Assembly: GCA_904063045.1 (NCBI GenBank)
Contig: CAJFCJ010000005.1
Location: 2,660,165 to 2,724,164 of the forward strand
DNA: 64,000 bases
Reading direction: 5' to 3'
Origin: Dimorphilus gyrociliatus
Lineage: Eukaryota; Animalia; Annelida
How positions within the stretch are numbered: the first letter of the stretch is position 1; every line of letters starts with the position of its first letter. Positions 2,675 to 10,500 of the stretch are shown here, piece by piece. The position numbers and the translations under genes are program-made. The notes below the pieces were generated by a model. That model saw only the letters and a list, made by a program, of their open reading frames with translations, had not been told where the DNA came from and did no database searches.

Positions 2675-3859
2675 ATGTTTGGTTACGAACTACTTTTCAC
2701 ACACGTTCAAAGTCAATTAAGAGACAGTGAAGATGCTCTAGTCTCTGTAGCGCATTGGACTTTAATAAGTAATGGTTTCCTCTGCGTAGGAAAAGGAGAA
2801 CAGGTTTTTATTTCTATTTTTTTAGGCAACTTTCGATTTCAGTTACATAGAACATTTTTTTAAAAATTGAAAATATTATTAGCCCAGTGATGATATGCGT
2901 AAGTCAGAATTATTACCAAATGCTTGGAATTCTGATAAAGAAGTTTTCACCCTAATGTACGTCCAACCACCATCTGCACAAGTTCATCTTTTGAAAGTCG
3001 TTAGATCCTCTGGAGATTTACTTTTCTATTTCATGGTTTGTAGATTTGAATGAAGTTTGTATAGGCTTGTATTAATGAAGATATTTGGTTAAATAATTGA
3101 AAAAATAGGATCTTCAATCAGATGAAATGCGAGATGCAACTATCCCCGTGAACAATTACTGTACTGGGAATTTAATTTCTTTTGCCAGTGCTTTCAAGAA
3201 TATCGAAGAATTCCGAAAAGAATTAGAAAAGAATCTGTTAGGAGTTGGTGTATCCAAAGCTGAGGAAAAGGCTAAAAAAGATAAGAAAGACAACAATAAA
3301 AAGACTGACGATTCTTTAAGACACGAACCATTCAGAAGACAACCTGCTCTTTTTCAAAATCCAAGTATAAGACCAGGATTTGAGTCACCATTTGATATCG
3401 GAAGAAATGATTTGGACCCATTAGGTCATTTTGGAGCAGGGGGTGGAATGTATTTTGACCCTTTTAGAGGAGGTCATGGAAGAGGAGGCCCTAGAATTCC
3501 AGGACTGCCTCTGTAATTAATAATATAATTAATCTATACAACGAGTATTAATAACACCTTATTCTTTGTATTAACAGAGGAGCTGTACCTCCAGGCGCTA
3601 GATTCGATCCAATTGGTCCAGGTCATGGACGAGGAGGAAGAGGTGGAGGTTTCAGTGGGAATAGAATGGGGTAAGCCATTCACATAGATATGTAATATTT
3701 ATATACAGACACTTAATTATTTTAAAAATTACGTATTTACTTATATTTTATTGATTTCTTTCTATATTCCTTAAGATAATATTTCTTATTTAACCTGTTC
3801 TTAGCCCAGATCCAGATCATCTACCCCCACCTTCGGGCTACGAAGACATGTTTATGTAA
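2675..3859 (+). CDS. PSMF1: Proteasome inhibitor PI31 (FP domain + Pro/Gly-rich tail), multi-exon
   Basis: MFGYELLF...DALVSVAHWTLISNGFLCVG, ELLPNAWNSDKEVFTLMY, FDIGRNDLDPLG...GGMYFDP, GAVPPGARFDPIGP; last exon PDPDHLPPPSGYEDMFM* (TAA 3857-3859). Confidence 0.93.
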
Positions 3860-4587
3860 TAAATACATGCTAAAGAGACTGTGTTGCGTGGATTTAATGA
3901 AGGAAAAACATGCAAATATTTTTAAAATAAAAAGAAAAAAAAAGTAATATTGCAGATAATCAATGTAGATAAGTATCATGCCGTGCGCTATATGCAGTAA
4001 TAATCGTGACCAAAGACTTTTTAAGCAGTTTATCGAACGCTGTTCAACCTTTCCTTTTATTATTTAAACCTTACGCAATAATCCGACTGTTGTATTATAA
4101 ATTAGATATATACTGTATAGACAAGGCCACATTGGATAAAATCGATCTGGCTGAAAATCGGCCGTTTTTCTAATTAAGCGGCCGTTTGAAAACTGTTTGT
4201 CAACCTGATTGAAAACTATGGAACACGAGTACGTTACTAACGATTTATACCTATTTTATTTAGTATTAGCTATAATTCCTATACAAAACCAAATAAAACA
4301 GTAAAAGCCAACTTGCAAAGGTTTCCTATGAAAATTTTATCCTATTTATACGACTTGAAAGATAATTTTTAGTTGAAAGCAACTAGAAAAAAGGGGATTA
4401 GAAATGAAAATATAAAAAATATAACGACTAATACAATATTATTCGTTTCTTCTTTTATCGTCTTGTTTATTCTGTATAAACGTTAAAGGTATATTTTTTT
4501 TTGACATGTAAATTTGAAATATCTTTTCTCAACAGTTTTTATCGTTGTATCTATAACTAGATGCTTTCGTATGGCTGTCTCTATTTT

Positions 4588-4620
4588 TTTTCTCTCTCTC
4601 TCTCTCTCGCTCTCGCTCTC
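4588..4620. repeat. (TC)n/(TCGC) microsatellite
   Basis: tctctctctctctctctcgctctcgctctc is directly visible. Confidence 0.9.
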
Positions 4621-4689
4621 TTACTCGCTCGTCAAACCCTTCTCCCCGCCCCCTTTTCTTTAGATCCTGCTCTCTTTTCTCACACACTG

Positions 4690-4859
4690 TTTATCTCTTT
4701 CTCTGTGCGCGCGTGTGTATGTGTATATCTACTGCTCCAATATTCTCTTTCGAGCTAGTGGCGACGAACGAAGACGCAGTCTCGCGCGCTTTTTTGTTGC
4801 ATTCGTTATTTGTAACTCTTGACGACCGTATTAGGCGGTTGCGTTTATAAATGGTGAGT
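4690..4859 (+). promoter_or_regulatory. Putative promoter/first exon ending ATG|gtgagt, probably the 5' end of the tandem Rab gene
   Basis: Locally GC/CpG-rich segment flanked by CT and TA repeats, ending in a strong donor (ATG 4851-4853, GTGAGT 4854-4859). The nearest downstream + strand CDS is the tandem Rab. Confidence 0.4.
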
Positions 4860-4898
4860 GCGATTTATTATTTTTCTATACATATATATTAATATATA

Positions 4899-4901
<3 letters not shown>

Positions 4902-4931
<30 letters not shown>
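4902..4931. repeat. (TA)n microsatellite
   Basis: About 15 TA units visible. Confidence 0.9.
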
Positions 4932-4932
<1 letters not shown>

Positions 4933-4937
4933 CTGCG

Positions 4938-5305
4938 TTATACTAGGTTTATAGTCGAAATTTACATATTCATATTCAATAGAGATTGATATTTATATGT
5001 AAATAATAGTAATTACCTCTTCGAGTTTGTCTACTAAAAAAATCAAACAGGTACTTTGTATTTAGTACGGCCTGAAAAGGTTTTATTAGATATATATATA
5101 TATATATAGGGAGATATACACTTACATAGATTTGGAAGAGTCCAAAACTGTACATAAACCGCGTAGATTGCATATACTATATGTGGATTGAGTTCATATG
5201 GTACATAAGCTACTATATACTTGACCATATTCACGATAATTCCCTATATATGTATACAAGTGTCTCTCTATTATATATTTAGTAATATAGATAGTTTTTC
5301 CAAGC
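4938..5305 (-). CDS. Candidate small multi-exon gene of unknown function (5' end not resolved)
   Basis: Exons 5305-5221, 5176-5126, 5071-5017 and 4942-4938 are joined by GT-AG introns of 44, 54 and 74 nt (one with a GTAAGT donor and a ccttttcag acceptor). They give the open frame LGKTIYITKYIIERHLYTYIGNYREYGQ-YMQSTRFMYSFGLFQIY-AVLNTKYLFDFFSRQTRR-V*. No homology recognised. Confidence 0.3.
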
Positions 5306-5420
5306 CTATATGAACGGCATATATACATTATATATATTTCTGTAACTCTGTATACATAAATACATATTTATATAAGAATTATATAACGTATGATTTTAGT
5401 AAAAGACCTTTCATTCGCTG

Positions 5421-5438
5421 TCTCTTTCTTTCTCTCTC

Positions 5439-5486
<48 letters not shown>

Positions 5487-5489
5487 TTT
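5421..5489. repeat. (TC)n / GAGA-type microsatellite
   Basis: About 60 bp of near-perfect TC repeat. Confidence 0.9.
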
Positions 5490-6249
5490 CTAGATTGCTC
5501 GATCTATCTATCTCTTCTCATGTTGTCCATAAGTAATTGCCTATTTGCATTTCATGTTCAATTGTAGGTAGTTTATATTTTTAAAAAGAAAAATGAACTA
5601 ATATAAAAATGAATAGAGAGAATGGAAGAAGAGAAAGAAAAACAAAGAGTAGAACAATTGATATCCGATACAAATTCAATAAGCGCACCTTATACGGTCG
5701 ATATACATATTCCTCTAGTACTAAAACATTTATACAATTTGGGCTTAGGGTGTCTAGATTGGCTATAAGTCAAAGCTTTTATGTTTACATTATAGGTATA
5801 TATAAACTATTTAAAGAATAATTTCTTCTTTAAACTTAATCAATCAAAAATTTCTCTTTCCTATTAAACCGATAAACATGATTATCGATTTTGGCGGCAG
5901 TTTGTCCAAGATGTTTACAAACGTCAGCTGTCCATTATTTTTTTTACCTCTCCGTCTTTCTTTTTCTTTCTATCTCTTTTATAGCTCTATTCATAAGTTT
6001 CTTCGTTAAATACACACTCGACTCTTGTTGAGGAAATGAAGCTTAAAGGTTAAAAGGCACCTAATTAAACTATTGATGATACGAAATGGTAGGTGATATC
6101 GACCCATAGTTCTTTAACTGTCTGGTATACTGAAGAGGGGAGCAGGGGGAAGGCAAAAGAACCGTTTGTCGCGGGCAAACGAGTCCAATTAAGCTATATA
6201 CTCAGGAGAACCTTTTGATGTTTTAGCAGATGACGGACGGAAATTAACG

Positions 6250-7497
6250 ATGCGAGGAGAAAGTGAAAAGGTCAATAAGGCTGATGAGAACGTGGCTAAA
6301 GCGGTTGCTTATGAGTTTAAAGTAATAATAGTCGGAGATCCAAAAGCTGGGAAGAGCAGCCTTGTACAAAGCTACTGCCAAGGAATATTTAATAAAACTT
6401 ATAAAGCTACCGTCGGCGTTGAATACGCTGAACGCTTGGTTGAAGTTGAAGGCAAATTGATAAAGTTAGCACTATGGGATATATCGGGCCAAGAGATGCT
6501 GCTGAAAATTTCCGACAAGTATATCAAAGAAGCAGACGGTTTGATTTTCGTCTATGATGTAAGCGAGGAATCTTCATTCAATTCATTTCCAATTTGGATG
6601 AGATATGTTTCTCAGCATCTCGGAGGTAATAGCTCTTTATTAAAACTCCCAAAAGCCGTTGCTGGTAATAAAATAGATCTACGTCATAAACAAGTTGTCG
6701 CGCATTCTCACGCCAAGGAAGTAGCTATACCCGACGGTGTTGATGCCGACCATGTGATAGAAGTCTCTGCAAGAAGTGGAAAGAACCTAAATTTGCTATT
6801 CTATCTACTCACAAATCAGATGTACAGACTGTTTGCAAACGGAGGGATTAGGAGAATAGGAAAAACGTCTATACCAGCCGAAGGTCAAGCTGTATTCGAT
6901 GAAGAGATTTATAAACATTCGATAGACGGCTCACCGTCGTCTAGAGATGGTAGCGAGTATAGTCACGTATTTAAAATACTCTTATTAGGGGCGTCCCGAG
7001 TAGGAAAGACGTCTCTCAGATTTCGATTCTGCCGCGATTACTATTCAGCTGAATATTTTGCAACTGCCGGTTTCGAATACGGAACGAGGACAGTTGCAAT
7101 CGACAACGTTAGGGTCCGTATTCAAGTTTGGGATGTTGCGGGTGACGATGTTTACGATTCAACACGAAGAGGCTATTACAAGGGAGCGAACGCTTTTATA
7201 ATCGTTTACGACGTCGGAAATAAATCTTCGTTTACTAAGGCCGAAAACCTCTTGAAAGAACTAGACTTGTACGGACATTCCGAAGCCCCTAAAATTCTAG
7301 TTGGAAATAAATCAGATATTGGAGGTAAAAGAAAAGTTGGATTTTGTGCGGCAGAAGAATTTGCCGCTGGTTGGCGAGTTCCTTTATTAGAAAGCAGTGC
7401 CCAAACTGGGCATCAAGTAGATGCTGCTTTTATGAAACTGGCTATTGCCTTAAAAAGGCAACTAGCTCCATGGAAAAAACTTTATGATTTTTCATAA
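6250..7497 (+). CDS. Tandem (two-domain) Rab1/Rab8-like small GTPase, single coding exon, no C-terminal prenylation motif
   Basis: Domain 1: FKVIIVGDPKAGKS, TVGVEY, LWDISGQE, GNKID, EVSAR. Domain 2: EYSHVFKILLLGASRVGKT, TAGFEY, VWDVAGDD, YYKGA, GNKSD, ESSAQ. The linker is about 50 aa. The protein ends PWKKLYDFS with no Cys. Confidence 0.9.
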   Translation: MRGESEKVNKADENVAKAVAYEFKVIIVGDPKAGKSSLVQSYCQGIFNKTYKATVGVEYAERLVEVEGKLIKLALWDISGQEMLLKISDKYIKEADGLIFVYDVSEESSFNSFPIWMRYVSQHLGGNSSLLKLPKAVAGNKIDLRHKQVVAHSHAKEVAIPDGVDADHVIEVSARSGKNLNLLFYLLTNQMYRLFANGGIRRIGKTSIPAEGQAVFDEEIYKHSIDGSPSSRDGSEYSHVFKILLLGASRVGKTSLRFRFCRDYYSAEYFATAGFEYGTRTVAIDNVRVRIQVWDVAGDDVYDSTRRGYYKGANAFIIVYDVGNKSSFTKAENLLKELDLYGHSEAPKILVGNKSDIGGKRKVGFCAAEEFAAGWRVPLLESSAQTGHQVDAAFMKLAIALKRQLAPWKKLYDFS

Positions 7498-7591
7498 TTT
7501 ATGCCAACTCCAATTATTTTATAAAAAAATTTTGAATAATTAATAATAACACAAATTTAACAAGAGAACAAGAGGCAAATCAGTTTCGGAA

Positions 7592-10500
7592 TCAGTACTG
7601 TCCCCTTTTTCTTGATCGTCCTCGAAAGTTAGTTCGAAAGTTACTTCGAGTTCCACCATCCCCTCGCCCTCTAAATGAAGTTGTATTACTATTGCCACCT
7701 CTGTATGGTCTTATACTTCCAGTACCACTTGAGGGTCCAACTCCTCCTCCATTTCCGCCAGTTGCCCCTATTCGAGATCTATTTTCCGATTTTTGCCAGG
7801 GCATTGAACTAAAATCTTTTGTTGGCATGGCAGTTGGCATAGTGAGCAAGGACGGAATAGAAGGTTGCTGCCCTTCGAAGCGTTGAGGAGGAGGCTGCTG
7901 CTGTTGCGGCTGCATTGGTGGCGGTGGTTGCGGCGGCTGTTGTTGCTGTTGCGGCGGCTGAGGTTGTTGCTGAGGCTGATTTAGAGAAAGAGGTGGCCTT
8001 TGGAGGGTAGGTGAAATGAAAAAGTCTGTACCAGATGGTCGAAATCCAGTTGCTTGCATAGGTGGTCGAAATCTCGATCTTTGATCCTCTCCAAAGGGCA
8101 TTGAAGTTGTAGGTTTCGTAATCGATTGATTGTAAAATGCTGATTGATCATCAGCTACTTTTTGTTCTTCCGGAAGTTTAGGAGTGGGTAGAAGAGCTCT
8201 TGTTTCTTCAACGTTAGAGTTCGTATCCCACTTTGATTTTTTTCTCTTACGTTCCTCTTGTTCATTTTTAATTATATTCAAAGCATTTTGAGCCGATAAC
8301 AACCGCTTCTCTAATTCTTCAATATCCTCTGGACTATCATCTCCGCTGTCTGATTCATTTCCCAAAATAGTATCTTTTTGACATGCTGGTGCAAGGTCTC
8401 TTTCAAAAGAGTCCTTTTCCTCTCTTTTTTGTTCAGGTTGTACGACATCATCATTATCGCTTCTTTTGTCTCGACGATTTACTTCCAATGAGTCTTCTCT
8501 ATAAGACCTTTTATCTCTTTTTCGATCTTTTCTATCTCTTCTATCTCGAGGAGACCTCTCTCTTGACCTTGAGCGTCGAGGATGCCGTCTTCGTCTAGGC
8601 GACCTTGATCGTTTACGTCTAAGCTTTTTATCTCTGTCCCTTTCATCTCTCCTATCCCAATCATTCTTTCGATCACGTCTGTCCAGTCTTTCTGATCTTT
8701 CATTTCGCTCAGGTCTGTCTGATCTTTCCGGCCAATCTCGATGTTTGTCATTTTCTTGGAAAGTTGACTTTGTCTGCATATGACGATATAAGGATCGCTC
8801 TTCCTCAGCAGTTAGTGTCGCCGACCTCACAGTATTTGGTGCACTAGATAAGCCGCTAGTTGATGATGTTGACAGAAACCAGGACGGTTGCTCTGAAGGA
8901 AAAGGTATACGTGGTGGAGACCGTTCCACTTCCATATCCTTGAAAATATTTTTCTCAACTGGAGCGAATTTCCCATCAAGTCCTGGAATAGTTTCCGCAC
9001 TAACTTCTACAGAGCTTGGTGATGCAGTACTTTTAAGAGCGAAACCTAATAAACCTGCTGCTGACTCATTTGGAGACTCTTTTGATGATTTAGAGAAAAG
9101 ATTACTGAGAACAGTTGGCAAAACTGGTTTCTCTACTTTTCCCTTTCGTGCCATTTCATGCATTGTCTTTTCCATATTCTGTAATTGTAAGGCGGTAGGA
9201 GGTTTCTTTTCATTATTTTCCGTAGGGTTAAACCAACTTGGTCCAGATATTGGAACAGCGTTTTTGTATAAATCACTATCATCTTCGTCATTATCGTCTG
9301 ATTTGTCTGCGGTGTTAATCCCCAAAATCTCTTTCATCTCTTCATTCAGATCAGACATTGCTATCAAGTTTCCATCAACAACTACATTGTCCTTACTAGA
9401 GCCAGTACTTGTATTCGAAGGTTCGGTCTTTTTAAGCTCAACTCGTGCAGATATCTTAAGCAAATTCTGTTGAGAATATGTCAACTCTTCAACTTCTGCT
9501 ATTTTTTCATAAACGGCAGACATAATTTCATGAGATAGATGAAATTTTTTAAAATGTTCAATTATTTTTGTTATATTCAAAGAGCCATCATGTTTTCTAT
9601 TTTCCGAATCAGCTAAAATGGCTTTAAAATCGAAAGAGTTAAAAAATTCGTCCACTTTTTTACTGGATTGCTGCTTTGGCCTTTCCTTTTCCAGAACAGC
9701 TGCAGGATTATAGTGCGGTTCTATTCTTATTTTTGAATCATCATTCGCCTTCTCATTGTCTACTACTTCGTGTTCATCATCGTCATCGATTGTTACACTT
9801 GATGCAACTACATGAAAGATAATATCAAATAATAACACATATTTCTAGATATAAAAAAAATATACCTAATCCTGCCTGAGCCGGATCGTACTCGTCCTCC
9901 TCTGGTATTACTTTTTCATTAATTGTGTTATCGATCGGTTTGCTTTCTTGCTCCACTTCAGCCGGTTTTAACACTGAACTTCGGATTATTGGGGCAAAAG
10001 GCTTAGCAGAACGTGTTTTCACAACTATCAACAACAGAGTCTCTTTGCGTTGAGACGGTAATCCTGGACCTTCAAAAGGGAGGAATTCCGACGGAATAAT
10101 AGCGTCGGGAGTTAAAGGTGCTAAATAGATATCCTTAATAGTATTAGAGTAGTTACTAATAACCCCATATCGACCCCTCCCATGTAAATATGTAAACATT
10201 TGTGTGAAAAGATGGCGATCTGCTTCGCTCCATAGTTCTATGCGCATAATTGCAGCTTCCTAAGAGCAGACAAATTTAAAGATATAGCGAGTGAACATGC
10301 ACGAAACAGTTTATGAATATTAATTACCTTATTAGATCGTCTTGTTTTTAGTTGCTTGACATACTCATGAACTTGGTATGGACTTATTCTTCCGCATAAC
10401 GCTAGAGAGTCTGGCAAATCCTCATCAAGTCCCTCGCCATCTCCCGATACTAGATATGCGTTAGCCAGGAAGTTGGCCGTATTATCTTGAAGGTAAACAC

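What the first reader, a model, noticed from the sequence alone, without database searches (positions are those of the whole stretch)
6250..7497. A single polypeptide containing two complete Rab-like GTPase domains in tandem
Seen: two full G1-G5 sets (domain 1 ~6304-6790, domain 2 ~6955-7455) joined by a ~50-aa linker in one ORF. The domains are highly diverged from each other, which argues against a recent duplication or an assembly artefact. Established: canonical Rabs are single-domain. Known two-GTPase proteins (Miro, EngA/Der) have different architectures, and large Rabs (Rab44, RASEF, CRACR2A) have one GTPase domain. Inference: a little-studied 'double Rab' that could bridge two effectors or membranes, or in which one domain regulates the other. 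This is the best candidate in the window for an undescribed protein system.
Basis: partly seen in the sequence, partly recalled or inferred. Interest (0 to 1): 0.8.

Follow-up and report, generated by a model that had tools for sequence, protein, structure and literature searches.

The report
Annelid protein with two Rab-like domains
The worm Dimorphilus gyrociliatus has a real, transcribed gene for one protein made of two different Rab-like GTP-switch domains, and it belongs to a small, conserved, unstudied family whose named members are all annelids.

Summary
Window 6250-7497(+) is one 415-aa ORF with two Pfam Ras/Rab domains (residues ~22-190 and ~239-400). A ~48-residue linker joins them, and the two domains are 30% identical to each other.

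The genome is Dimorphilus gyrociliatus. RNA-derived contigs cover the whole ORF without joints and reveal an untranslated first exon ending at 4853, so the whole coding sequence lies in exon 2. Against a sister taxon, dN/dS is 0.02 overall and is low in both domains and in the linker.

About 20 colinear two-domain homologues exist. The three named ones are annelids (Dimorphilus, Paralvinella, Capitella). Domain-1 and domain-2 trees are each monophyletic and largely congruent, so this is an old fusion and not a recent duplication or a gene-model artefact.

Family-wide features:
- No C-terminal cysteine, so no prenyl anchor.
- A conserved C-terminal tail, LAPWKxxYxFS.
- In domain 2, Asp replaces the catalytic Gln, and the P-loop carries an invariant Arg.

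AlphaFold2 gives two good Rab folds but no confident interface between them. I found no paper describing the family. Unrelated ORFs with several Rab domains exist elsewhere, so the architecture alone is not unique. Function is inferred: a soluble two-headed Rab-like adaptor with one normal switch and one atypical domain. The scan noted the same stretch once before (s1-084638).

The parts
4824..4853 (+). 3' end of the untranslated exon 1. The exon start was not determined. The exon ends ...TTTATAAATG and is followed by the donor GTGAGT at 4854.
   Evidence: In one search, RNA contigs of runs X6 and X3 carry 29 or more loose letters in front of 6226/6229. Those letters match window 4824-4852 exactly (0 expected by chance). 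The donor site was read.
4854..6226 (+). Intron 1 (GT...AG). There is a tandem NAGNAG acceptor, tag|cag, so a second acceptor lies at 6229.
   Evidence: Two loose-end positions (6226 and 6229) carry the same leader. The sequence was read. A low-depth contig (X6, 5516-6255, depth 17 against 428) looks like unspliced RNA.
6227..7497 (+). Exon 2 up to the stop codon. It holds the whole coding sequence. The 3' UTR runs on beyond 7497, and its end was not mapped.
   Evidence: the X6 contig spans 6229-7963 with no differences and no joints, and the X3 contig spans 6229-7952.
6250..7497 (+). Coding sequence, 415 codons plus TAA. The ORF cannot extend 5' because exon 1 carries an in-frame TAG with either acceptor.
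   Evidence: for the ORF. The frame was read by hand. The protein is identical to the annotated protein P0121 in GCA_904063045.1.
6313..6819 (+). Domain 1 (residues 22-190), Rab-like. Motifs: G1 GDPKAGKS, G2 Thr54, G3 WDISGQ (Gln81 at 6490-6492), G4 GNKID, G5 EVSAR.
   Evidence: dN/dS is 0.013.
6820..6963 (+). Linker (residues 191-238). Conserved patches flank a variable stretch: the upstream patch aligns to the family consensus LRYRxLGxxxxLG, and the downstream patch to DGPEYxHLF. Predicted to be disordered.
   Evidence: Alignments A1 and A2. pLDDT is about 30 for residues 198-237. dN/dS is 0.033. RNA contigs X1 (6698-7071) and X2 (6523-7031) bridge it.
6964..7449 (+). Domain 2 (residues 239-400), Rab1-like. 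Motifs: G1 GASRVGKT with the invariant P-loop Arg250 (6997-6999), G2 Thr272, G3 WDVAGD with Asp299 (7144-7146) in place of the catalytic Gln, G4 GNKSD, G5 ESSAQ.
   Evidence: Foldseek gives TM 0.92-0.94 to Rab1b and Rab8a. dN/dS is 0.016.
7450..7494 (+). Conserved C-terminal tail ...LKRQLAPWKKLYDFS, with no cysteine and so no prenylation motif.
   Evidence: 0 Cys in the last 30 residues of 13 of 14 members, and none has a CC, CXC or CAAX ending. The tail motif is conserved in 12 of 14.

Best explanation
This is a two-exon gene of the annelid Dimorphilus gyrociliatus. Exon 1 is untranslated and exon 2 holds the whole coding sequence. The gene encodes a soluble 415-residue protein made of two different Rab-like G domains on a flexible ~48-residue linker. 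It belongs to an old, conserved family whose named members are all annelids.

Shown:
- One ORF, one transcript, and strong purifying selection on both domains and on the linker.
- The fusion predates the diversification of the family.
- Both domains keep the residues needed to bind guanine nucleotide and Mg2+.
- There is no lipid-anchor motif.

Inferred:
- Domain 1 usually keeps the catalytic Gln and acts as a conventional GTP/GDP switch.
- Domain 2 has Asp in place of the Gln and an invariant Arg at the P-loop position of Ras Gly13. It does not cycle like a normal Rab and is most likely mainly GTP-bound and insensitive to TBC-type GAPs.
- The protein therefore works as a cytosolic two-headed adaptor. 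One head binds a partner constitutively, the other binds conditionally, and the conserved tail (LAPWKxxYxFS) serves as a further docking site.
- It is not a membrane-anchored Rab.

I am about 0.9 confident of the identity and gene structure, and about 0.4 confident of the mechanism.
For: - ORF and domains.
- Organism: record GCA_904063045.1, which a paper names as Dimorphilus gyrociliatus.
- Transcript: depth in run X6 jumps from 17 to 428 exactly at the acceptor (6229). One contig covers 6229-7963 without joints. Contigs from a sister taxon (X3) and from two metatranscriptomes (X1, X2) bridge the linker. Exon 1 was located.
- Selection: dN/dS is 0.021 overall, 0.013 in D1, 0.033 in the linker and 0.016 in D2, at dS ~1.
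- Family: colinear homologues at 34-53% identity. In the word-based search full-length members score 542 bits or more (near-complete fragments 476-537), against 305 bits or less for generic double Rabs. In the exhaustive profile search of 1.84 billion representatives the ranges overlap: the divergent member P0214 scores 410, while canonical multi-Rab ORFs score 429-467. The named members are Paralvinella and Capitella.
- One gene in every locus examined, with any introns lying inside D1 only.
- Tree: D1 clade 100/97 and D2 clade 100/99, with largely matching internal topology.
- Motifs: the P-loop Arg of D2 is present in 14 of 14 members and the Asp at G3 in 13 of 14. D2 is more conserved than D1 (53% against 47% mean identity). 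There is no C-terminal Cys.
- Structure: two Rab folds with a disordered linker.
Against: - No biochemical or localisation data exist, so the nucleotide state of either domain is a guess from sequence.
- Domain 1 does not always keep the Gln (Lys in P0010 and P0011, Glu in P0016 and P0214), so 'D1 is the normal switch' may not hold across the family.
- An invariant Arg, as opposed to any bulky residue, hints at a catalytic or phosphate-contacting role and not mere inactivation (see rival 1).
- AlphaFold2 was run without nucleotide and on only 11 sequences, so the missing interface is weak evidence.
- Annelid restriction rests on three named members. Most members come from unnamed assemblies whose taxa I could not determine.
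Confidence: 0.6

Rival explanations
1. Domain 2 is not a dead or locked domain. It is a self-contained GTPase that uses its own P-loop arginine (Arg250) as an internal arginine finger, as GBP1 and atlastin do. Hydrolysis would be triggered when G domains pair, either domain 1 with domain 2 within one chain or two chains together. That would make it a GAP-independent, dimerisation-activated small GTPase.
For: The Arg is invariant in 14 of 14 members and sits at the third variable P-loop position, GxxRxGK[ST]. That is the position of GBP1 Arg48 and atlastin Arg77, which act as internal arginine fingers on dimerisation (review PMC5084822). Domain 2 is the better conserved domain, which is unexpected for a degenerate module. 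In several members domain 1 has Arg or Lys at the same position. Tethering two G domains would favour pairing.
Against: The fold and sequence are Rab-like and not dynamin-like. AlphaFold2 gives no confident D1-D2 packing (pTM 0.45; the Atlas model has pTM 0.50). In Ras, a bulky residue at position 13 impairs hydrolysis (my own knowledge). No residue is known to take over the water-positioning role; Asp299 is only a candidate.
Confidence: 0.2
2. One reading: it is a bona fide membrane-bound double Rab that bridges two membranes or two effector sets in vesicle traffic.
For: Both domains have Rab1, Rab8 and Rab11 as their best matches. Domain 2 keeps the RabF2, RabF4 and RabF5 signatures (alignment).
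Against: There is no CC, CXC or CAAX ending, and no Cys in the last 30 residues of 13 of 14 members. There is no N-terminal Gly2. No transmembrane or lipid-binding domain was found by Pfam. The switch II RabF3 signature, which canonical Rabs use for REP/GDI binding, is lost in both domains.
Confidence: 0.08
3. It is an artefact or a recent accident: two adjacent Rab genes merged by misassembly or read-through, or a young tandem duplication fused in this lineage only.
For: Some two-domain 'Rab' entries elsewhere look like this. The halves of the Rotaria, Lucilia and P0222 proteins are each other's nearest relatives.
Against: The same colinear ORF occurs in independent assemblies and RNA data sets. 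The linker is under purifying selection. D1 and D2 form separate clades, with support for their monophyly against the reference Rabs and largely congruent topologies. In intron-bearing orthologues the linker and domain 2 share an exon with the end of domain 1.
Confidence: 0.02

Closest known systems
Rab1/Ypt1 and Rab8 (canonical Rab GTPases)
   Same: The closest sequences and structures for both domains. Domain 2 is 38-39% identical to Rab1a/Rab1b with TM 0.92-0.94. Domain 1 scores about 105 bits to Rab1A. The G1-G5 motifs are present and the RabF2, RabF4 and RabF5 signatures are recognisable in domain 2.
   Different: Two G domains per chain; no C-terminal prenylation cysteines; the switch II (RabF3) signature is lost in both domains; in domain 2 the catalytic Gln is replaced by Asp and Arg sits at the Ras Gly13 position.
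Miro (mitochondrial Rho GTPase)
   Same: A eukaryotic protein with two Ras-superfamily G domains in one chain, the second of them atypical (papers listed).
   Different: Miro has two EF-hand pairs between its G domains and a C-terminal transmembrane anchor. Neither is present here (Pfam). Here the linker is ~48 residues and predicted to be disordered, and both domains are Rab-like.
EngA/Der (bacterial tandem GTPase)
   Same: Two consecutive G domains in one chain.
   Different: EngA has TrmE/Era-class G domains plus a KH-like domain and works in ribosome assembly in bacteria (PMC4245960, listed). Here the MMR_HSR1 hit is only a weak side-hit to domain 1, and there is no KH domain.
Non-prenylated Rab-like proteins (RABL2, IFT27/RABL4, IFT22/RABL5) and Gln-less small GTPases (Rnd, Rab24). 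This comparison rests on my own knowledge and was not tested here.
   Same: A Rab-like fold with no lipid anchor, so targeting must come from protein-protein contacts. Some lack the catalytic Gln and are mostly GTP-bound.
   Different: All of these are single-domain. No specific sequence relationship to them appeared in any search. Neither the tail motif nor the tandem layout is found in them.
GBP1 and atlastin (dynamin-superfamily GTPases with an internal P-loop arginine finger)
   Same: An Arg at the same P-loop position, GxxRxGK[ST] (one search compared with the review).
   Different: A different fold class, with large G domains plus helical domains. The resemblance is one residue only and is a lead, not a membership.
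Generic multi-Rab ORFs (Rotaria sordida P0017/P0018, Lucilia cuprina P0019, Solemya velum P0211, unnamed P0210, P0212, P0213, P0222)
   Same: Two to four Rab domains in one predicted protein.
   Different: Their domains keep canonical DTAGQ motifs, some end in Cys, and the halves tested in the tree (Rotaria, Lucilia, P0222) are each other's nearest relatives. In the word-based search they score 305 bits or less against the family profile, compared with 476 or more for members. In the exhaustive search the ranges overlap. They are independent origins.

Membership tests
Ras superfamily small GTPase fold (Pfam PF00071) | A G domain with G1 GxxxxGK[ST], a G2 Thr, G3 DxxG, G4 NKxD and G5 SA[KR]-like motifs | tested here: met
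   Two PF00071 stretches. All five motifs are present in both domains and conserved across the family. Foldseek gives TM 0.92-0.94 to Rab1b and Rab8a.
Rab family sensu stricto | Best similarity to Rab subfamilies over Ras, Rho, Arf and Ran | tested here: met
   The top PDB hits of both halves are Rab1, Rab8, Rab11, Rab5, Rab30 and Rab43.
Rab family sensu stricto | RabF1-F5 signature motifs (IGVDF, KLQIW, RFRSIT, YYRGA, LVYDIT). The motif definitions are from my own knowledge (Pereira-Leal and Seabra). | tested here: not met
   Read by eye on the Rab1A alignments. D2 has AGFEY, RIQVW, VYDSTR, YYKGA and IVYDVG, so F2, F4 and F5 are kept, F3 is lost and F1 is weak. D1 has VGVEY, KLALW, MLLKIS, YIKEA and FVYDVS, so F3 and F4 are lost.
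Rab family sensu stricto | C-terminal Cys motif (CC, CXC or CAAX) for geranylgeranylation | tested here: not met
   The protein ends ...APWKKLYDFS. There is no Cys in the last 30 residues of 13 of 14 members, and none has a terminal Cys motif.
Rab family sensu stricto | A catalytic Gln in G3 (DTAGQ) | tested here: inconclusive
   D1 has WDISGQ. The Gln is kept in 10 of 14 members and replaced by Lys or Glu in 4. D2 has WDVAGD, with Asp in 13 of 14 members and Gln in none.
Miro | Two G domains flanking EF-hand pairs, plus a C-terminal transmembrane anchor | tested here: not met
   No EF-hand family among the Pfam hits at E 0.01 or below. The linker is 48 residues and predicted disordered. The tail is polar and aromatic, not a hydrophobic helix.
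EngA/Der | Two Era/TrmE-class G domains plus a C-terminal KH-like domain | tested here: not met
   No KH-like domain was found. MMR_HSR1 is only a secondary hit (E 3.4e-10) beneath Ras (E 7.6e-81).
Large Rabs (CRACR2A, Rab44, Rab45/RASEF) | N-terminal EF-hands and a coiled coil, followed by a single C-terminal Rab domain | tested here: not met
   No EF-hand hits. The Atlas structural matches to EFCAB4B clusters cover one Rab domain only, at TM 0.29-0.50.
Unnamed annelid tandem Rab-like family (this family) | Colinear D1-linker-D2-tail architecture, GxxRxGK[ST] plus DxxGD in D2, and the tail motif LAPWKxxYxFS | tested here: met
   Alignments A1 and A2 and the motif table. The profile separates members from generic double Rabs in the word-based search, and less cleanly in the exhaustive search. 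D1 and D2 each form a single clade.
GBP/atlastin-type GTPases activated by dimerisation | An internal P-loop Arg finger, with hydrolysis that depends on G-domain dimerisation | not testable with these tools
   Only the Arg position matches. The fold is Rab-like and not dynamin-like. Whether the domains dimerise is unknown.

The most novel reading that the evidence does not exclude
The two tethered Rab-fold domains form a nucleotide-dependent pseudo-dimer. In it, the invariant P-loop arginine of domain 2 (with Asp299) replaces the usual Gln plus GAP arginine. This would be a GAP-independent, self-timing small GTPase built on a Rab fold. It would represent a catalytic solution so far known from GBP and atlastin, arising independently in an annelid-specific family.
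Probability: 0.15. Interest if true: 0.75.

Novelty: new variant of a known kind. Interest (0 to 1): 0.5.

Why it matters
Small GTPases of the Rab type are textbook single-domain, lipid-anchored switches. Here a conserved, expressed animal protein family breaks three of those rules at once: it has two G domains per chain, no lipid anchor, and a second domain with Asp for the catalytic Gln plus an invariant P-loop Arg.

It offers a natural test case for how tethered G domains talk to each other, and for whether a Rab fold can adopt an internal arginine finger. It is also a clean lineage marker, an old fusion gene, for annelid comparative genomics.

The significance is limited because function is unknown, the taxon range is narrow as far as it can be named, and unrelated multi-Rab ORFs show that domain tandems arise repeatedly.

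Tried and rejected
- Spliced-leader trans-splicing. The loose 29-nt leader ending in ATG on RNA contigs looked like a spliced leader. I rejected this because the leader lies in cis at window 4824-4852 with a GTGAGT donor.
- 5' extension of the ORF through exon 1. Rejected because exon 1 has an in-frame TAG. The 442-aa variant P0122 is an ORF call that runs into the intron.
- Recent duplication or gene-model fusion. Rejected by the tree.
- Naming the taxa of unnamed members. The contigs are ERZ metagenome-style assemblies or SRA runs. A full-text search for their accession numbers found only the Dimorphilus assembly. The listing of cluster members gave names only for Capitella and Solemya. The taxon range therefore stays open.
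- Literature. Five full-text searches for tandem, double or multiple Rab or GTPase domains, and for Dimorphilus plus Rab, returned only Miro, EngA and irrelevant papers. One search failed on a format slip and was resent.
- Foldseek against the PDB found only single-domain Rab matches and no solved two-Rab chain.
- The ESM Atlas gave only generic Ras-family clusters.
- The bacterial-type promoter and terminator scan around exon 1 is uninformative for a eukaryote.
- Whether D1 and D2 are sisters (an internal duplication) or come from two different Rab paralogues stayed unresolved. The joint node also includes a Rab33 sequence, has 85/51 support, and the reference panel was small.
Full report
**1. 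The observation**

Window 6250-7497 (+) is a single uninterrupted ORF of 415 codons. Pfam finds the Ras family (PF00071) in two separate stretches, with a whole-protein E-value of 7.6e-81. Roc and Arf appear as overlapping side-hits. No EF-hand, KH, coiled-coil or membrane domain is found.

Each half alone matches solved Rab structures. Residues 1-197 hit Rab1A, Rab8A and Rab11A almost equally, at about 105 bits and E about 4e-29. The second half hits Rab1A, Rab1B and Ypt1 best, at 146 bits and E 2e-41, followed by Rab8. The two halves are only 30% identical to each other (82 bits).

**2. Organism and gene structure**

The protein is letter-for-letter the annotated product of record CAJFCJ010000005.1 of assembly GCA_904063045.1. 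A genome paper lists that assembly as Dimorphilus gyrociliatus, a miniature annelid (PMC10212961).

I laid public contigs on 5300-8300. Run X6 comes from the same organism and has no differences. Its depth steps from 17 to 428 at exactly position 6229, which is RNA-like behaviour. One of its contigs covers 6229-7963 with no joints. Run X3 is a sister taxon, with 138 differences over about 1.7 kb, most of the listed ones at third codon positions. It has a contig over 6229-7952. Two unrelated metatranscriptomes hold near-identical pieces that bridge the linker: X1 at 6698-7071 with 2 differences, and X2 at 6523-7031.

In front of 6226/6229 the RNA contigs carry 29 or more letters that do not match the adjacent DNA. 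I first suspected a spliced leader. However, the same 29 letters lie in cis at window 4824-4852, followed by G and the donor GTGAGT.

The gene therefore has three parts:
- an untranslated exon 1 ending at 4853;
- an intron from 4854 to 6226, with a NAGNAG alternative acceptor at 6229;
- exon 2, which holds the whole coding sequence.

Exon 1 carries an in-frame TAG, so Met1 at 6250 is the start. Exon 1 ends in ATG. After splicing this opens a 6- or 7-codon uORF that stops 2 nt before the main ATG.

**3. Selection**

I compared the ORF with the sister-taxon copy (L006:778-2025, protein P0001, 96% identical). The Nei-Gojobori dN/dS values at dS about 1 are as follows:

| Region | dN/dS |
|---|---|
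| Whole ORF | 0.021 |
| Domain 1 | 0.013 |
| Linker | 0.033 |
| Domain 2 | 0.016 |
| Tail | 0.038 |

Both domains and the piece that joins them are kept by selection as one reading frame.

**4. The family**

A length-restricted word search returned colinear two-domain homologues of 389-469 aa at 34-53% identity (P0002-P0016). The only named one in that search was a hypothetical protein of the annelid Paralvinella palmiformis.

A profile of 11 members (A2) added P0123 and P0124. It showed a clear score gap: full-length members score 542 bits or more and near-complete fragments 476-537, while the next hits score 305 bits (Rotaria) and 268 bits (Lucilia).

An exhaustive profile search of 1.84 billion representatives added one more distant full-length member, P0214 (397 aa, 410 bits), and fragments P0217, P0219 and P0224. 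In that search the score ranges overlap, because canonical multi-Rab ORFs reach 429-467 bits. P0224 is Capitella teleta ELU07285.1, which is domain 2 plus the tail on a 1.4-kb scaffold.

Every named member is an annelid: Dimorphilus, Paralvinella and Capitella. The rest sit in unnamed metagenome-style or SRA assemblies whose taxa I could not establish.

In every locus examined, both domains lie in one gene. The coding sequence has no intron in Dimorphilus, in Paralvinella (L004) or in L002, L010 and L013. It has one intron in L009 and two in L011, always inside domain 1. The end of domain 1, the linker and domain 2 always share one exon.

**5. History of the fusion**

I built a maximum-likelihood tree of all D1 and D2 segments together with 17 single-domain Rabs and the halves of three generic double Rabs. 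It used 52 rows and 171 columns under LG+C20+F+G4.

All D1 segments form one clade (100/97) and all D2 segments form another (100/99). Their internal topologies match in several respects: P0214 is basal in both, and P0016+P0123, P0006+P0007 and P0005+P0010+P0011 group in both. The fusion therefore predates the family's diversification, and the two domains have evolved together since.

By contrast, the halves of the Rotaria, Lucilia and P0222 proteins are each other's nearest relatives. Those are young and independent tandems.

Whether D1 and D2 are sisters is unresolved. The joint node also includes a Rab33 sequence, has 85/51 support, and the reference panel was small. Both domains share Ser or Ala-to-Ser usage in G3 (WDxSG). 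This hints at a common origin but is weak evidence.

**6. Sequence anatomy**

Domain 1:
- G1 is GDxxxGK[ST].
- The G2 Thr is invariant.
- G3 is WDxSGQ. The Gln is kept in 10 of 14 members, with Lys or Glu in the other 4.
- G4 is NKxD, followed by a conserved LRHKQ.
- G5 is EVSA[KR].
- There is a conserved AKEFAIPEGM patch.

Domain 2:
- G1 is GxxRxGK[ST], with the Arg invariant in 14 of 14 members.
- G2 has Thr in 12 of 14 members and Ser in the other two.
- G3 is WDVSGD, with Asp in 13 of 14 members and Gln in none.
- G4 is NKxD.
- G5 is E[TSAV]S[AS][RKQ], E[ST]SA[RKQ] in most members.

Other features:
- Domain 2 is the better conserved domain, at 53% against 47% mean pairwise identity.
- No member ends in a Cys motif.
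- 12 of 14 members end in LAPWKxxYxFS or a close variant.
- The switch II Rab signature (RabF3) is unrecognisable in both domains.
- RabF2, RabF4 and RabF5 survive in domain 2 (alignments).

By the usual criteria these are Rab-like domains and not true Rabs.

**7. Structure**

AlphaFold2 on the family alignment gives two Rab folds. Block-mean pLDDT is mostly about 60-90, and it is higher in domain 2. Residues 198-237 are predicted with low confidence (pLDDT about 30) and pTM is 0.45. There is therefore no confident relative placement of the two domains. The ESM Atlas's own model is similar, with pTM 0.50. Foldseek against the PDB returns only single Rab chains, at TM 0.92-0.94 normalised by target and 0.40 by query. 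No solved chain has two Rab domains.

**8. How it most likely works**

Shown: both domains keep every residue class needed for guanine specificity (NKxD, SA[KR]), phosphate binding (P-loop Lys and Ser/Thr) and Mg2+ binding (Thr/Ser in G2, Asp in G3). Both should therefore bind GTP or GDP.

Inferred: without a prenyl tail or any membrane domain, the protein is soluble and must be placed by protein contacts. Domain 1 usually has the catalytic Gln and can behave as a regulated switch. Domain 2 lacks the Gln and has a large basic side chain where Ras has Gly13. In Ras and Rho proteins, changes at these two positions abolish GAP-assisted hydrolysis (my own knowledge). The simplest reading is a constitutively GTP-loaded binding head. 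Its strong conservation fits an effector-binding role.

The result would be a two-headed adaptor, with one head constitutive, one head conditional, and a conserved tail peptide. I give this about 0.4.

The main rival (0.2) starts from the invariance of the Arg. It lies at the third variable P-loop position, which is the position of Arg48 in GBP1 and Arg77 in atlastin. Those residues act as internal arginine fingers when G domains dimerise (review PMC5084822). A tethered pair of G domains would be an obvious way to build such a pairing. The tools here cannot test it.

The artefact readings are effectively excluded.

**9. Comparison with what is known, and novelty**

Miro, EngA/Der and the large Rabs fail their defining features (see the membership table). 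Five full-text searches found no description of tandem Rab or Rab-like proteins or of this family. The library does not cover most subscription journals.

The architecture is not unique in sequence space. The exhaustive search and the Atlas show many unnamed ORFs with two to four canonical Rab domains. These include a Solemya velum model and clusters labelled Nematoda, Arthropoda, Nucleocytoviricota and Asgard archaea. These are unrelated to this family in origin.

I therefore rate this as a new variant of a known kind. It is a well-delimited, old, undescribed Rab-like family with a tandem layout and an unusual second active site. It has no known function and, as far as can be named, an annelid-only range. 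Interest is 0.5.

The scan had already noted the same stretch once (s1-084638: hydrolysis-impaired second domain, no lipid anchor). My tests agree with the sequence facts in that note but leave 'hydrolysis-impaired' as an inference.

Noticed in passing
window 4851-4853 joined to 6227-6249: Exon 1 ends in ATG. After splicing to 6227, or to 6230 at the NAGNAG acceptor tag|cag, it opens a 7- or 6-codon uORF (M Q M T D G N stop) that ends at TAA 6245-6247, only 2 nt before the main ATG at 6250. It is a possible translational control element.
   Followed up: partly
window 7592-9838 (-): The convergent neighbour is a 748-aa single-exon ORF rich in Arg/Ser/Asp-Glu repeats and poly-Gln/Pro, with no Pfam hit. 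Its stop codon is 95 nt from the stop of the double-Rab gene, and RNA contigs run across both 3' ends. The sister taxon has an 18-nt insertion in the poly-Gln tract at 7915.
   Followed up: no
proteins P0210, P0211 (Solemya velum KAL5008153.1), P0212, P0213: These are predicted proteins, some of them continuous ORFs, with three or four canonical Rab domains (DTAGQ) in one chain. They come from unnamed assemblies and a bivalve. The Atlas also lists clusters of double Ras-domain proteins of about 360-430 aa labelled Nematoda, Arthropoda, Nucleocytoviricota and Asgard archaea. Multi-Rab proteins as a class seem unstudied.
   Followed up: partly
L009:3141-3299 and 3947-4975; L011:1991-2221, 2638-2877 and 3031-3834: Orthologues in two unnamed large contigs have one and two introns inside domain 1, at different places. 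The Dimorphilus, Paralvinella, L002, L010 and L013 copies have none in the coding sequence. This indicates intron loss or gain within the family.
   Followed up: partly
window 6313-6819 (domain 1), tree: Domain 1 of the Dimorphilus lineage sits on a long branch (0.79 substitutions per site on the branch shared with the sister taxon), while its domain 2 branch is 0.24. It also has lineage-specific insertions (GGNSSLLK and VDADH). This points to accelerated change in domain 1 only.
   Followed up: no
window 5516-6255: A low-depth contig (17 against 428) in the RNA-like run X6 covers the 3' part of intron 1 and runs across the acceptor. It is probably unspliced pre-mRNA. A 70-aa ORF at 5609-5821 lies inside this intron.
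   Followed up: no
window 4590-4625 and 4880-4932: A (CT)n/(CTCG)n tract lies just upstream of exon 1, and a long (TA)n tract lies at the start of intron 1.
   Followed up: no
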